This document shows positions 6,312-56,181 of a stretch of DNA of 64,000 bases, one piece after another. The translations under genes were made by a program, and so were the position numbers. Where the stretch lies: positions 1-64,000 of the IMG/VR virus record IMGVR_UViG_3300036770_003943; one strand, written 5' to 3'. The notes below the pieces were generated by a model that worked only from the letters and a program-made list of their open reading frames with translations, was not told the origin of the DNA and made no database searches. Each line of letters opens with the position of its first letter. Positions within the stretch are counted from its first letter, which is position 1.

Positions 6312-6977
6312 TTATCTAGCAGTCAGAGCCAATTGTGTTCTATTACGCACACACATATTTTTCATTACCGCACTGACATGAATCTTTACAGTGCTTTCAC
6401 TTATTTTTAACACCGTGGCAATTTGCTTATTACTGAGTCCGCGATTGGCAATAAGATCAAATACCTGCCGTTGCCTATCAGTCAGATGAATTTCGTTTGT
6501 TTTGTTGGGTCTTATTGTATTACCTGACAAATTTTGTATAATATGCTTTGGCCAATAGGATTTCTGTTCCAACAATGTTGTTATAGACTGTTTACCTTCG
6601 TCGATACCATAATCAGACAGCAATGGAAAAAGTCCGTCAACCCCAGATTTTTGCATCTCTTTGATATCAGATATATGCGTGTCTTTACCCACACCAAGAA
6701 CGACCAAAGGCCTTTTATCAACACTGTTGAATTTGAACAAGGTATCCATCATTAACATAAATTCACTTAAAGAACTGTGTTTTTTTACAAAGGTAGAAGA
6801 GATTGCAATGACATCTATGCCAGATTTCAAATAGCTGTTGAGTTCTTTGAAATTCTCACAGTACTTTACTTTCACTGGCCAATCTTCAAAGTCACTTTCT
6901 TTGACATTGTTTTCATCTAAATACTGTCGATAATTTTCACGAAAAATTACTAACCTGGGTTTTTTGTTTGCTGGCAT
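6312..6977 (-). CDS. NarL/FixJ (LuxR-HTH) family transcriptional regulator with degenerate receiver domain
   Basis: LTDRQRQVFDLIANRGLSNKQIATVLKISESTVKIHVSAVMK is a clear LuxR-type HTH; probable ATG at 6977 after TAAGGAG. Confidence 0.85.
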   Translation of the reverse strand: MPANKKPRLVIFRENYRQYLDENNVKESDFEDWPVKVKYCENFKELNSYLKSGIDVIAISSTFVKKHSSLSEFMLMMDTLFKFNSVDKRPLVVLGVGKDTHISDIKEMQKSGVDGLFPLLSDYGIDEGKQSITTLLEQKSYWPKHIIQNLSGNTIRPNKTNEIHLTDRQRQVFDLIANRGLSNKQIATVLKISESTVKIHVSAVMKNMCVRNRTQLALTAR

Positions 6978-7153
6978 AATTAACTCCTTATTAACAATAC
7001 TTAAAGTGTTTAATACTTTCAACTATCCAAACTTAGTATTATTATTAATGAAGTATTATTAGTAGTATTAGCTTCTATTTTAACGATATCGTAGTAAAAT
7101 GTCTACAAAATTTATATAACTTTAGTAAGTATTTGTAAGCAAGATTGCCAATG

Positions 7154-7176
7154 AAAAAGGGCACCTAAGTGCCCTT
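7154..7176 (-). terminator. Intrinsic terminator closing the tmRNA gene
   Basis: AAGGGCAC-TTAG-GTGCCCTT followed by T run. Confidence 0.8.
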
Positions 7177-7530
7177 GGTAAGTTTGGTAACAAGGTCTTT
7201 CCTACCCCGTCAGGCTTAAGCGGCTAGCTTAACTTCCTGATAAAAATAGTCGTCATTTGCGTCTATTTAGTTTGCTAGGATTACGTCCTTCGCCTATCGC
7301 ATCGTCTGGTCAAATACTGCATCACCTGTCGAACCTAATTCCGGCCCATCATAATCAGTCTGTATCGCCATTGACCCAATCAACTGTCCATATTGCTGCT
7401 TCTTCAGTTTTTGCCAGCAATCTTTTATGAACTCATTGATTTTCTGCCACATACAAACTCCTTATGGTGGACCGGGCGGGGAACTGCCCCCCGCGTCCAG
7501 TTAATTCTTCTTATTCCTTCATACGATGAT
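7177..7530 (-). ncRNA. ssrA: tmRNA, circularly permuted (two-piece) gene
   Basis: Acceptor piece ends ...GCGGGG-GGCAGTT-CCCCGC-CCGGTCC-A-CCA at 7465. Coding piece starts GGGCCGG at 7347 and pairs with CCGGUCC including the G3.U70 Ala identity pair. Tag frame 7260-7216 = ANDDYFYQEVKLAA*. Outer ends are approximate. Confidence 0.92.
7294..7452 (-). CDS. 52-aa ORF starting in the tmRNA intervening segment and overlapping the coding piece
   Basis: TAAGGAG directly after CCA, 5-nt spacer, ATG; MWQKINEFIKDCWQKLKKQQYGQLIGSMAIQTDYDGPELGSTGDAVFDQTMR*. Confidence 0.55.
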   Translation of the reverse strand: MWQKINEFIKDCWQKLKKQQYGQLIGSMAIQTDYDGPELGSTGDAVFDQTMR

Positions 7531-7536
7531 AACAAG

Positions 7537-7542
7537 TATTTA
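7537..7542 (-). promoter_or_regulatory. Late-type TAAATA box upstream of the tmRNA acceptor piece
   Basis: Same TAAATA motif as precedes structural genes in this window. Confidence 0.55.
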
Positions 7543-7544
7543 TT

Positions 7545-7628
7545 TTATGTAAACATTACTGCTAATACAAACATTAGCACTAGCAATGAGAATATTACAG
7601 TGGTATTTTTATTTTCCGGGTCGACCAT
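7545..7628 (-). CDS. 27-aa single-pass membrane peptide
   Basis: Manual translation MVDPENKNTTVIFSLLVLMFVLAVMFT; fills the gap exactly. Confidence 0.5.
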   Translation of the reverse strand: MVDPENKNTTVIFSLLVLMFVLAVMFT

Positions 7629-7629
7629 T

Positions 7630-7824
7630 TTATTTCCCCCAATACATGTCGCCTATTATCCAAGGTTTCTCAGATTCAGCAGCACGACTAATTAAATCAG
7701 TAATTTGTTCTGTTTGACTTTTTATTTCAATCTGTTGATTTGACAAAATTTTTCTTTGTCTATCAACATCGACTCTATCTAACGAATCTTCAATAAACTT
7801 TTTTACTTGTTCGTTAGCAGACAT
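7630..7824 (-). CDS. Hypothetical protein
   Basis: 64-aa ORF in operon spacing. Confidence 0.6.
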   Translation of the reverse strand: MSANEQVKKFIEDSLDRVDVDRQRKILSNQQIEIKSQTEQITDLISRAAESEKPWIIGDMYWGK

Positions 7825-56146: not shown

Positions 56147-56181
56147 AAAAAATCCCCCGATAATATATTTATCGAGGGATT
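56147..56181 (-). terminator. 12-bp hairpin plus U run containing a late TAAATA box
   Basis: AAUCCCUCGAUA-AAUAUAU-UAUCGGGGGAUU-UUUU-AUG. Confidence 0.7.

What the first reader, a model, noticed from the sequence alone, without database searches (positions are those of the whole stretch)
7154..7542. Phage-encoded circularly permuted two-piece tmRNA under a late-type promoter
On the minus strand the T-arm/CCA piece (ends 7465) precedes the GGGCCGG 5' piece (starts 7347). The 7-bp acceptor stem has G3.U70, and ACGAUG (coding piece) can pair with CAUCGU (acceptor piece). The tag ANDDYFYQEVKLAA ends in the ClpX-type LAA. The T-loop GGCAGUU resembles alphaproteobacterial two-piece tmRNAs, whereas the envelope genes look betaproteobacterial, so the RNA may be foreign to the host. 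A TAAATA box at 7537-7542 implies late expression. No smpB gene is in the window.
Basis: partly seen in the sequence, partly recalled or inferred. Interest (0 to 1): 0.72.

Follow-up and report, generated by a model that had tools for sequence, protein, structure and literature searches.

The report
Phage two-piece tmRNA carrying a nested ORF
A huge freshwater or groundwater phage carries its own split ribosome-rescue RNA (a two-piece tmRNA), which is a known kind of phage gene, but the spacer normally discarded between the two halves carries a ribosome-binding site and a small open reading frame, a pattern shared by dozens of related phage tmRNA genes that I did not find described in the papers I could search.

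Summary
Window 7530..7157 (minus strand) is a circularly permuted tmRNA gene. It scores 108.7 bits on Rfam tmRNA_permuted (cut-off 47) and 68.8 bits on alpha_tmRNA (cut-off 50).

The window is the first 64 kb of a 232-kb jumbo myovirus contig. That contig has no smpB and no tRNA genes.

The late-promoter idea is supported. NATAAATA boxes precede the tail sheath, tail tube, adaptor and virion genes. The phage encodes a T4 gp55-type late sigma factor. The box at 7544-7537 predicts a start at about 7531, just upstream of the first helix.

The idea that the RNA is alpha-type and foreign to a beta-type host cannot be decided. The RNA is a mosaic: an alpha-like T-loop with a beta-like 3' domain.

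Phage two-piece tmRNAs are already published (Melnitz, pelagiphages), so the RNA itself is an ordinary new member.

The new point is the 117-nt intervening segment. It has AAGGAG plus ATG 12 nt after the CCA end and a 52-codon frame. It is 97% identical in two relatives whose tRNA-like parts are only 63-74% identical.

Across 67 distinct viral permuted tmRNA genes with spacers of 80 nt or more, 37 carry such a frame (shuffles give 2.8). They show a synonymous-substitution bias, and two are HNH endonucleases.

The parts
7537..7544 (-). Late-type promoter box AATAAATA (a 7 of 8 match to T4 TATAAATA). By the T4 rule it predicts a start at about 7531/7530.
   Evidence: Sequence. The motif is enriched in non-ORF DNA and lies upstream of structural genes. 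A gp55-type late sigma factor is present in the genome.
7526..7553 (-). Overlapping sigma-70-like site TTTACA-16-TGtTATCAT. Its start would be at about 7519, inside the helix strand.
   Evidence: Promoter scan, 10 of 12 matches plus TG. It is judged less compatible with the covarying helix H1.
7465..7530 (-). Acceptor piece of about 66 nt. It contains the H1 5' strand (7528-7520), the H2 5' strand (7516-7512), the H3 5' strand (7505-7498), the T-arm (7494-7476, loop GGCAGUU at 7488-7482), the acceptor 3' strand (7475-7469), A73 (7468) and CCA (7467-7465).
   Evidence: Covariance-model alignment, two-strand fold and RNAalifold covariation. The same 34-nt 3' end occurs in 7 other viral contigs.
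7348..7464 (-). Intervening segment of 117 nt, removed on maturation. Its two ends form a leader-trailer helix, and it holds SD AAGGAG at 7463-7458.
   Evidence: The segment is 97% identical in L039 and L044, although their tRNA-like parts are only 63-74% identical to the window's.
7294..7452 (-). ORF of 52 codons starting at ATG 7452, 12 nt after the CCA end. It runs 54 nt into the coding piece. In L039 and L044 one extra A gives a 32-codon version that ends inside the spacer.
   Evidence: No homologues were found.
7177..7347 (-). Coding piece. It contains the acceptor 5' strand (7347-7341), the H3 3' strand (7328-7321), the H2 3' strand (7316-7312), the H1 3' strand (7308-7300), the pseudoknot-1 region (7299-7274), the resume codon GCA (7260-7258), the tag ORF (7260-7216) and the 3' hairpins.
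   Evidence: The tag region recurs in other viral tmRNA genes.
7152..7176 (-). Intrinsic terminator: an 8-bp stem AAGGGCAC/GUGCCCUU followed by a U run.
   Evidence: Terminator scan.
7630..7824 (-). Upstream 64-codon ORF. Its homologue in contig L034 lies inside the tmRNA spacer.
   Evidence: BLASTP gives 45% identity over 47 aa, E 2e-12.
6312..6977 (-). Downstream gene for a GerE/LuxR-type (sigma-70 region 4-like) HTH regulator. It is context only and not part of the RNA.
   Evidence: Pfam GerE 1.1e-16 and Sigma70_r4_2 9e-9.

Best explanation
This is a functional two-piece (circularly permuted) tmRNA gene of a jumbo myovirus.

Shown by sequence, fold and comparison: the gene order is acceptor piece, then a 117-nt intervening segment, then the coding piece. 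The two pieces can be joined by a 7-bp acceptor stem with G3.U70 and by three further helices that covary among relatives. A tag frame starts at GCA and ends in LAA. A late-type promoter box lies upstream and an intrinsic terminator downstream.

Inferred from established tmRNA biology:
1. A single precursor of about 375 nt is made late in infection by host RNA polymerase carrying the phage gp55-type sigma factor.
2. Host RNase P cuts 5' of G7347, and host 3'-processing enzymes expose CCA at 7465.
3. Host AlaRS charges the RNA through G3.U70 and A73.
4. Host SmpB and EF-Tu deliver it to ribosomes stalled on broken mRNAs. The phage contig has no smpB.
5. Translation resumes at GCA 7260, adds ANDDYFYQEVKLAA, and the LAA end directs the product to ClpXP-type proteolysis.

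The likely benefit is to keep ribosomes free during late infection, when mRNAs are being degraded.

The intervening segment is probably not inert. It carries a strong ribosome-binding site and an ORF, as do more than half of the related phage tmRNA genes with long spacers. The precursor may therefore also serve as a small mRNA.
For: - Covariance-model scores are well above the cut-offs, and ARAGORN at a relaxed threshold gives the same call and tag.
- The two-strand fold has 26 intermolecular pairs. In 13 relatives, 22 of 39 pairs show compensatory changes and G3.U70 is invariant.
- The family is conserved in at least 27 viral contigs with this T-arm and in 101 distinct viral permuted tmRNA genes overall.
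- The late-promoter motif, the structural genes it precedes and the gp55 homologue support late expression. A terminator follows the gene.
- The phage contig covers the locus at an even 16x with no differences in the best-holding DNA run.
- Relatives' tag regions are present in two metatranscriptome runs.
- Published precedent exists: Melnitz and the pelagiphages carry two-piece tmRNAs (PMC9004378).
- For the spacer.
Against: - There is no RNA evidence for this phage itself. The RNA runs hold only related tag regions.
- The T-loop is non-canonical (GGCAGUU).
- ARAGORN at default settings misses the gene.
- No smpB is found, but the record is only about 65% complete.
- A sigma-70-like promoter that would truncate helix H1 overlaps the late box.
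- The window's spacer ORF differs by a frameshift from the two relatives that share the spacer. It has no homologues. Alone it is only weakly unlikely by chance: 147 of 2000 shuffles reach the same coverage, before the ribosome-binding site is counted.
Confidence: 0.85

Rival explanations
1. The locus is mainly an expression cassette for the small spacer ORF. In this view the tmRNA halves serve as processing signals that release a mini-mRNA, and trans-translation by this RNA is secondary. This overlaps with the best explanation rather than excluding it.
For: - The spacer is the best-conserved segment between the window and L044/L039: 97% against 63-74% for the tRNA-like parts.
- 37 of 67 long spacers carry ORFs, against 2.8 in shuffles.
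- Substitutions are biased towards synonymous changes.
- HNH endonucleases and a known phage protein family occur in spacers.
- SD-like motifs are almost exclusive to ORF-bearing spacers: 26 of 39 against 1 of 62.
Against: - The tRNA-like domain, the helices and the tag frame are themselves conserved and covary.
- Many relatives have short hairpin spacers without any ORF, so the tmRNA function stands alone.
- The window's ORF is frameshifted relative to its two relatives.
Confidence: 0.1
2. The RNA acts as a decoy or modifier of host trans-translation. It would either titrate SmpB or re-route tagged proteins with a phage-specific tag, rather than simply adding rescue capacity.
For: - The phage encodes no SmpB.
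- The T-loop is non-canonical.
- Some relatives have long atypical tags that do not end in AA.
- A phage RNA consisting only of the tRNA-like domain (mycobacteriophage DS6A) is cited as a tmRNA inhibitor (PMC4131195).
Against: - This RNA has a complete mRNA-like domain. Its resume context AAUAGAC-GCA and its LAA end are like those of working tmRNAs.
- The identical tag peptide recurs on different tRNA-like backbones, which argues for selection on a translated tag.
Confidence: 0.06
3. The gene is a non-functional passenger: a decaying copy of a host ssrA picked up by the phage.
For: - There is no smpB and no direct evidence of expression.
- ARAGORN misses the gene at default settings.
- Its parts look mosaic.
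Against: - All defining elements are intact.
- Compensatory changes across many viral contigs show continuing selection on the structure.
- The gene has its own promoter box and terminator.
- No copy of the exact 34-nt acceptor end exists in 185,579 species genomes, so it is not a fresh capture.
Confidence: 0.04
4. The gene is bacterial DNA joined to a phage contig by mis-assembly.
For: A 49-nt stretch of the tag region (7216-7264) is shared exactly with more abundant entities in the same sample. Unitigs break there.
Against: - Contigs of equal depth (16x) and with no differences flank both sides.
- The neighbouring genes on both sides are phage genes on the same strand.
- Related viral contigs carry the same arrangement.
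Confidence: 0.02

Closest known systems
Two-piece tmRNA (ssrA) of Methylophilales phage Melnitz and of the pelagimyophages HTVC008M and Mosig (Buchholz et al. 2022, PMC9004378)
   Same: - Both are phage-borne, circularly permuted tmRNAs in large aquatic T4-like myoviruses without smpB.
- Both show alpha-like features, which raised the same host-mismatch question for Melnitz.
- Both lie next to a transcription-factor gene.
- RF04321 hits HTVC008M at 90.6 bits.
   Different: - There is no detectable DNA similarity to any INPHARED phage.
- The Melnitz gene is reported after an early promoter and with a glutamine riboswitch. Here there is a late-type box and no riboswitch hit.
- The HTVC008M spacer is a 49-nt hairpin without an ORF. 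Here the spacer is 117 nt with an SD and an ORF.
Cellular two-piece tmRNAs of Alphaproteobacteria (Caulobacter; RF01849) and of a betaproteobacterial lineage (RF01850)
   Same: - The gene order, the acceptor stem with G3.U70, the joining helices, pseudoknot 1 and the ANDx...AA tag are the same.
- The T-loop GGCAGUU is close to the alpha consensus GGCgGUA.
- The 3' motif CCUUGUUACCAAA equals the beta consensus.
   Different: - The window passes the alpha cut-off (68.8 against 50) but fails the beta cut-off (42.3 against 84). It mixes features of both.
- The consensus spacers in the Rfam models are only about 35 nt, too short for an ORF.
- The exact acceptor end is absent from 185,579 species genomes.
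tmRNA genes interrupted by group I introns that carry homing endonuclease genes, and the permuted tmRNA with a tRNA-Ala in its intervening sequence (PMC11915505)
   Same: In both cases a part of the tmRNA gene that is removed from the mature RNA hosts other genetic elements, including homing endonuclease genes.
   Different: - There the host element is a self-splicing intron in the T-loop of one-piece genes, and the enzymes are LAGLIDADG endonucleases.
- Here it is the processing-removed spacer of permuted genes. It carries HNH endonucleases (L027, L088), 21-27-aa hydrophobic peptides and other small ORFs.
- That paper does not mention protein-coding spacers.
T4-type late promoters (TATAAATA read by gp55 with gp33 and gp45)
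   Same: - An 8-nt box with no -35 element precedes the virion genes.
- A gp55-family sigma factor is encoded.
   Different: - The consensus here is NATAAATA; the first T is not conserved.
- No transcription start has been mapped.
- gp33 and gp45 homologues were not searched for.

Membership tests
Permuted (two-piece) tmRNA, Rfam RF04321 | Covariance-model score at or above the curated gathering score | tested here: met
   108.7 bits against 47, E 2.9e-20, with the full model 1-213 matched. The same result comes from the whole-record search.
Permuted (two-piece) tmRNA, Rfam RF04321 | Permuted order: the 3' half of the tRNA-like domain, ending in an encoded CCA, lies upstream of the 5' half and the tag frame | tested here: met
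   CCA is at 7467-7465, G1 at 7347 and the tag at 7260-7216, all on the minus strand.
Permuted (two-piece) tmRNA, Rfam RF04321 | A 7-bp acceptor stem with the alanine identity pair G3.U70 and discriminator A73 | tested here: met
   7347-7341 pairs with 7475-7469, with G7345.U7471 and A7468. G.U is invariant in 13 relatives.
Permuted (two-piece) tmRNA, Rfam RF04321 | Inter-piece helices that hold the two RNAs together, supported by covariation | tested here: met
   Helices H1, H2 and H3 are recovered by the two-strand fold. H1 and H3 each show 3-7 sequences with compensatory changes per pair.
Permuted (two-piece) tmRNA, Rfam RF04321 | A pseudoknot upstream of the resume codon | tested here: inconclusive
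   The stem AGGA/UCCU (7289-7286 with 7280-7277) is predicted and varies compatibly in relatives. The crossing stem is only CG/CG (7299-7298 with 7285-7284). No pseudoknot-aware tool was available.
Permuted (two-piece) tmRNA, Rfam RF04321 | A tag frame that starts at an Ala codon without an AUG and ends in a hydrophobic Ala-rich C-terminus and a stop | tested here: met
   GCA at 7260, 14 codons giving ANDDYFYQEVKLAA, then TAA. The upstream context AAUAGAC was read from the sequence.
Permuted (two-piece) tmRNA, Rfam RF04321 | The precursor is actually cleaved into two RNAs, and the RNA works with SmpB | not testable with these tools
   No RNA run holds this phage. smpB is absent from the 232-kb record, so host SmpB would be needed.
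Alphaproteobacterial subtype (RF01849) | Score at or above the gathering score, and a GGCNGUA-type T-loop | tested here: met
   68.8 bits against 50. The T-loop GGCAGUU compares with the consensus GGCgGUA. This shows resemblance, not origin. The same T-arm also occurs in one-piece viral tmRNAs.
Betaproteobacterial subtype (RF01850) | Score at or above the gathering score of 84 | tested here: not met
   42.3 bits, with the acceptor piece left unaligned. Relatives with the same acceptor end do pass: L008 91.6, L016 115, L018 95.4. The window's 3' motif equals the beta consensus.
T4-type late promoter | A TATAAATA-like box about 6 nt upstream of the start, used for late genes, with a gp55-family sigma factor encoded by the phage | tested here: met
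   AATAAATA lies at 7544-7537. Of 49 ATAAATA copies, 29 lie in the 5% non-ORF DNA. They precede the sheath, tube, adaptor and virion genes. phrog_12791 gives E 3.6e-79 and phrog_234 gives E 3.8e-25 at G000:125907-126734. The transcription start itself was not mapped.

The most novel reading that the evidence does not exclude
In a large set of aquatic phages, the intervening segment of the two-piece tmRNA gene is a gene slot. Host tRNA-processing enzymes would cut a small mRNA out from between the two tmRNA halves.

The slot holds small hydrophobic peptides, HNH endonucleases or, in this window, a 52-codon (32-codon in two relatives) ORF behind AAGGAG. The pre-tmRNA would then be both a messenger and a ribosome-rescue RNA.

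In 22 of 37 cases the stop codon ends one base before the RNase P site. A released message would therefore end at its own stop codon and could itself be a substrate of the tmRNA that flanks it. That last step is speculation.
Probability: 0.4. Interest if true: 0.75.

Novelty: new variant of a known kind. Interest (0 to 1): 0.55.

Why it matters
A tmRNA in a phage is no longer surprising in itself, and this one adds a member from a jumbo freshwater or groundwater myovirus with a late-type promoter.

What would matter is the spacer. If it is translated, it is a new way of packing a protein gene inside a stable-RNA gene, with expression tied to tRNA-type processing. It would also link a small phage protein to the ribosome-rescue system transcribed with it.

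The modular swapping of acceptor piece, spacer and tag seen among relatives shows that phage tmRNA genes evolve by cassette exchange. This weakens the use of tmRNA type as a marker of host or of host jumps.

All of this can be tested with a cloned 450-bp fragment.

Tried and rejected
- **ARAGORN at default settings** finds no tmRNA in the window and no tRNA in the whole 232 kb. The relaxed threshold was needed.
- **DNA search of INPHARED phages**: megablast and blastn find no match to the locus.
- **Exact 34-nt acceptor end** in 185,579 species genomes: none.
- the degenerate genome scan had one N too many. The nearest cellular tmRNA, and hence the host, could therefore not be sought.
- **L039 as a host candidate**: it has Bmp-type and outer-membrane-like neighbours and 44% GC. 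I rejected it because the 12-kb contig L044 shares the same downstream gene and several genes with this phage. L039 may also be a low-coverage chimera.
- **RNA runs**: only related tag regions are present, and nothing from this phage's spacer or acceptor piece.
- **Spacer ORFs against databases**: Pfam and PHROGs give no family for the window's ORF. The homologue search returned only a spurious gene call across a related tmRNA.
- **Cyanobacterial tmRNA model**: no hit.
- **The 37-aa L006 peptide** was too short for the protein search. The L035 ORF is an orphan.

Full report
**1. What is there**

Rfam's tmRNA_permuted model matches 7528-7216 over its full length at 108.7 bits (gathering score 47, E 2.9e-20). 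The alpha_tmRNA model matches 7574-7174 at 68.8 bits (gathering score 50). ARAGORN finds nothing at default settings. At a relaxed threshold it calls a permuted tmRNA with the tag ANDDYFYQEVKLAA.

A two-strand fold of the predicted pieces recovers 26 intermolecular pairs:
- the 7-bp acceptor stem, 7347-7341 with 7475-7469, including G7345.U7471;
- helix H3, 7505-7498 with 7328-7321;
- helix H2, 7516-7512 with 7316-7312;

The T-arm is a 6-bp G-C stem with the loop GGCAGUU. A73 and CCA are encoded. An intrinsic terminator lies at 7176-7157.

**2. Where it sits**

The window is the first 64 kb of a 231,776-bp IMG/VR virus record that CheckV estimates as 65% complete. Its GC content is 38.5% and nearly all genes are on the minus strand. 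Neighbouring and nearby genes include:
- a collagen-like tail fibre gene, a papain-like protease and the RNR small subunit;
- tail sheath, tail tube, head-tail adaptor and virion proteins.

The sheath is 39-46% identical to those of the jumbo phages PA5oct, Atu_ph07, Phosso and the RaK2 group. The record has no SmpB and no tRNA gene. In the best-holding public DNA run (a subsurface metagenome), contigs cover the locus at an even 16x with no differences. Lower shares occur in aquaculture, freshwater and lake runs.

**3. Is it a real, selected RNA?**

The exact 34-nt acceptor end occurs in 7 other viral contigs and in none of 185,579 species genomes. A degenerate T-arm pattern finds 27 viral contigs. 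Most of them hold full permuted tmRNAs scoring 73-125 bits, and five hold one-piece tmRNAs with the same odd T-arm.

RNAalifold on 13 relatives predicts 39 pairs, and 22 of them keep pairing through changes on both sides. H1 appears as CAUCGU/ACGAUG, UUGCUGU/ACAGCA, GACUGU/ACAGUC and AUUGUUGU/ACAACA. H3 varies likewise. G3.U70 never varies. This is the signature of a working structure, not of a decaying capture.

**4. Promoter**

ATAAATA occurs 49 times in the genome, and 29 of these copies lie in the 5% of DNA not covered by ORFs. In the window the box lies 5-55 nt upstream of the start codons of the tail sheath, tail tube, adaptor and three virion protein genes.

The phage encodes a T4 gp55-type late sigma factor at G000:125907-126734 (phrog_12791 E 3.6e-79; phrog_234 E 3.8e-25).

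The tmRNA gene has AATAAATA at 7544-7537. By the T4 rule (my knowledge of T4 late promoters: the box spans -13 to -6), the start falls at about 7531. That is 3 nt before helix strand C7528.

A sigma-70-like TTTACA-16-TGtTATCAT site overlaps the box. It would start transcription at about 7519 and lose the covarying H1 strand, so I rank it second. Some relatives have both a clean TTGACA-17-TATACT site and the AATAAATA box, so dual control is possible. Late expression is inferred, not shown.

**5. Alpha, beta or foreign?**

- The window passes the alpha model, fails the beta model (42.3 bits against 84) and has no cyanobacterial hit.
- The T-loop matches the alpha consensus GGCgGUA. The beta consensus is the canonical UUCGAUU.
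- The 3' motif CCUUGUUACCAAA equals the beta consensus rather than the alpha GGCAACAGAAA.
- Relatives with the identical acceptor end pass the beta cut-off.
- The tag region ANDDYFYQ(E/D)(V/L/F)KLAA recurs on viral tmRNAs that have a quite different, canonical tRNA-like domain.

The gene is therefore a mosaic. The tmRNA subtype says little about its origin, and the host remains unknown. My mistyped pattern cost the last scan of bacterial genomes, so the closest cellular tmRNA could not be sought.

**6. What is already known**

Phage tmRNAs are known. Two-piece forms were described in OM43 phage Melnitz and in pelagimyophages, and 53 two-piece calls were made among 18,146 phage genomes, mostly aquatic. 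The same question of an alpha-type RNA in a non-alpha host was raised there (PMC9004378). The 2025 tmRNA database lists 79 phage sequences and is the source of RF04321 (PMC11915505). As a phage two-piece tmRNA, this is a new member of a known kind.

**7. The intervening segment**

Between CCA (7465) and G1 (7347) lie 117 nt. They begin UAAGGAGUUUGUAUG: an AAGGAG Shine-Dalgarno motif, a 5-nt spacer and ATG 7452. A 52-codon frame follows and runs to 7294, 54 nt into the coding piece. Taken alone this is only mildly unlikely: 147 of 2000 shuffles give equal ORF coverage, before the SD is counted. Three lines of evidence make it worth attention.

(a) *Conservation.* Two other contigs share this spacer at 97% identity: L039, and L044, a 12-kb contig that shares several genes with this phage. 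Their acceptor pieces are only 63-66% identical to the window's, and the stretch from G1 to the resume codon is 74-89% identical. The part that is thrown away is the best conserved. It has evidently been exchanged between different tmRNA backbones.

(b) *Family-wide pattern.* I collected 101 distinct viral permuted tmRNA genes.
- Of the 67 with spacers of 80 nt or more, 37 have an ATG ORF filling at least 80% of the spacer. Dinucleotide shuffles give 2.8 +/- 1.7, with a maximum of 8.
- 32 of the 37 have an SD, against 0.2 in shuffles. The antisense strand has 3 such ORFs.
- The ATG lies 11-14 nt after the CCA end in 29 of 37.
- The stop codon ends one base before G1 in 22 of 37.
- Strong SD-like motifs in the first 12 nt after CCA occur in 26 of 39 ORF-bearing spacers and in 1 of 62 others.

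(c) *They are genes.*
- Same-length pairs differ at third, first and second codon positions 110, 64 and 29 times. For example, L084 against L104 shows 11 synonymous and 1 non-synonymous codon change.
- Two spacers hold HNH endonucleases (L027 E 8e-24; L088 E 3e-27), and one holds a member of phrog_419.
- Fourteen hold 21-27-aa hydrophobic peptides such as MNDDLTPLAIGVVVVLVVFALVLL.
- The spacer ORF of L034 is a homologue (45% identity, E 2e-12) of the window's own 64-codon ORF at 7824-7630, which here lies just upstream of the tmRNA.

Against coding in this particular window: L039 and L044 have one more A in an A-run. That gives a 32-codon frame ending inside the spacer, so the window's C-terminal half is not conserved as protein. 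No homologues exist.

The two ends of the spacer also form a covarying leader-trailer helix. This helix accounts for some conservation and may mask part of the SD.

Cellular consensus spacers in the Rfam models are only about 35 nt. The isolate HTVC008M has a 49-nt hairpin spacer. The held literature mentions a tRNA and a repeat element in such spacers, but no ORFs.

**8. How it most likely works**

Shown:
- the gene anatomy;
- the pairing and its covariation;
- the tag frame;
- the promoter box and its association with late genes;
- the terminator;
- the absence of smpB from the contig.

Inferred from established tmRNA biology:
1. One precursor is transcribed, probably late in infection.
2. 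RNase P cuts at G7347 and 3' processing exposes CCA at 7465.
3. Host AlaRS alanylates the RNA through G3.U70.
4. Host SmpB and EF-Tu deliver it to stalled ribosomes.
5. Translation resumes at GCA 7260, adds the 14-residue tag, and ClpXP-type proteases recognise the LAA end.

The spacer ORF, if used, must be translated from the precursor or from a released fragment. In this window it overlaps the 5' half of the tRNA-like domain, so translation and maturation of any one molecule would exclude each other.

**9. Verdict**

The RNA is an ordinary new member of a published class. The gene-bearing spacer is, as far as I could find, undescribed. It is robust at the family level and plausible but unproven for this window.

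My confidence is 0.85 that this is a functional phage tmRNA, about 0.65 that it is under late control, and about 0.4 that the window's spacer ORF is expressed and functional.

Noticed in passing
G000:125907-126734 (outside the window), and ATAAATA boxes in the window at 56172, 54492, 52014, 49044, 29805, 24547, 21935 and 14089 (minus strand): The phage has a T4 gp55-type late sigma factor. A NATAAATA box lies 5-55 nt upstream of the tail sheath, tail tube, adaptor and virion protein genes. This amounts to a T4-like late regulon in a PA5oct/RaK2-like jumbo phage.
   Followed up: yes
window 7630-7824 (minus strand) and L034:3623-3850: The 64-codon ORF just upstream of the tmRNA has a homologue (45% identity, E 2e-12) that in contig L034 sits inside the tmRNA intervening segment. 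The acceptor piece has evidently moved relative to this gene.
   Followed up: partly
L084, L104, L115, L122, L135, L124, L151, L068, L103 and others (tmRNA intervening segments): A family of 21-27-aa hydrophobic peptides (MNDDLTPLAIGVVVVLVVFALVLL and variants) is encoded between the two tmRNA halves. Each has AAGGAG, an ATG 12-14 nt after CCA and a stop codon ending 1 nt before G1. Substitutions are strongly biased towards synonymous changes. The N-terminal MNDD/MNDN resembles the start of tmRNA tags (ANDD...); I have no explanation for this.
   Followed up: partly
L027:1252-1626 and L088:503-871: HNH homing-endonuclease genes (phrog_2255, E 8e-24 and 3e-27) lie inside the intervening segments (359 and 707 nt) of two viral permuted tmRNA genes.
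   Followed up: partly
All 101 viral permuted tmRNA genes, the 4 nt before G1 (window 7351-7348): UGAU (73 genes) or UAAU (17 genes) precedes G1. A stop codon therefore sits at -4 to -2 in about 90% of the genes, whether or not the spacer has an ORF.
   Followed up: no
L023:about 1440-1560, L002 and L004 (tag regions): Some close relatives have long atypical tag frames, for example AKTSTKLGTFKVTAGKGFRFSGSKAASTKEVAFV. These do not end in Ala-Ala.
   Followed up: no
window 7216-7264: In the source-like DNA run, this exact 49-nt stretch of the tag frame is at about 50x while the phage is at 16x. Many 85-95% similar contigs, including some in two metatranscriptome runs, cover only 7181-7276. Other, more abundant entities share this tag region. 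I could not tell whether they are phages or the host.
   Followed up: partly
window 6312-6977 (minus strand): A GerE/LuxR-type HTH protein with sigma-70 region 4 similarity is encoded directly downstream of the tmRNA terminator. In phage Melnitz, the tmRNA is reported directly upstream of a transcription co-activator gene.
   Followed up: no
whole record G000 (231,776 bp): No tRNA gene was found by ARAGORN in a jumbo phage contig that nevertheless carries a tmRNA. The record is estimated to be only 65% complete.
   Followed up: partly
L026:10600-10755: A 104-bit partial match to OLE RNA (RF01071, model positions 437-594) lies inside a dense tRNA array on a 110-kb viral contig. The same contig also has a one-piece tmRNA.
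   Followed up: no
L035:about 1600-1650: There are three tandem copies of CCAUAAGGAAAUAU, that is, the CCA end plus an SD-like motif, at the start of the intervening segment.
   Followed up: no
L039 (ENA contig, 1535 bp): This contig looks like a recombinant or chimeric tmRNA gene. Its acceptor piece is of the L036/L044 type, while its spacer and 5' coding piece are of the window's type. Helix H1 would then pair only through G.U wobbles. Coverage is very low, so an assembly artefact is possible.
   Followed up: partly
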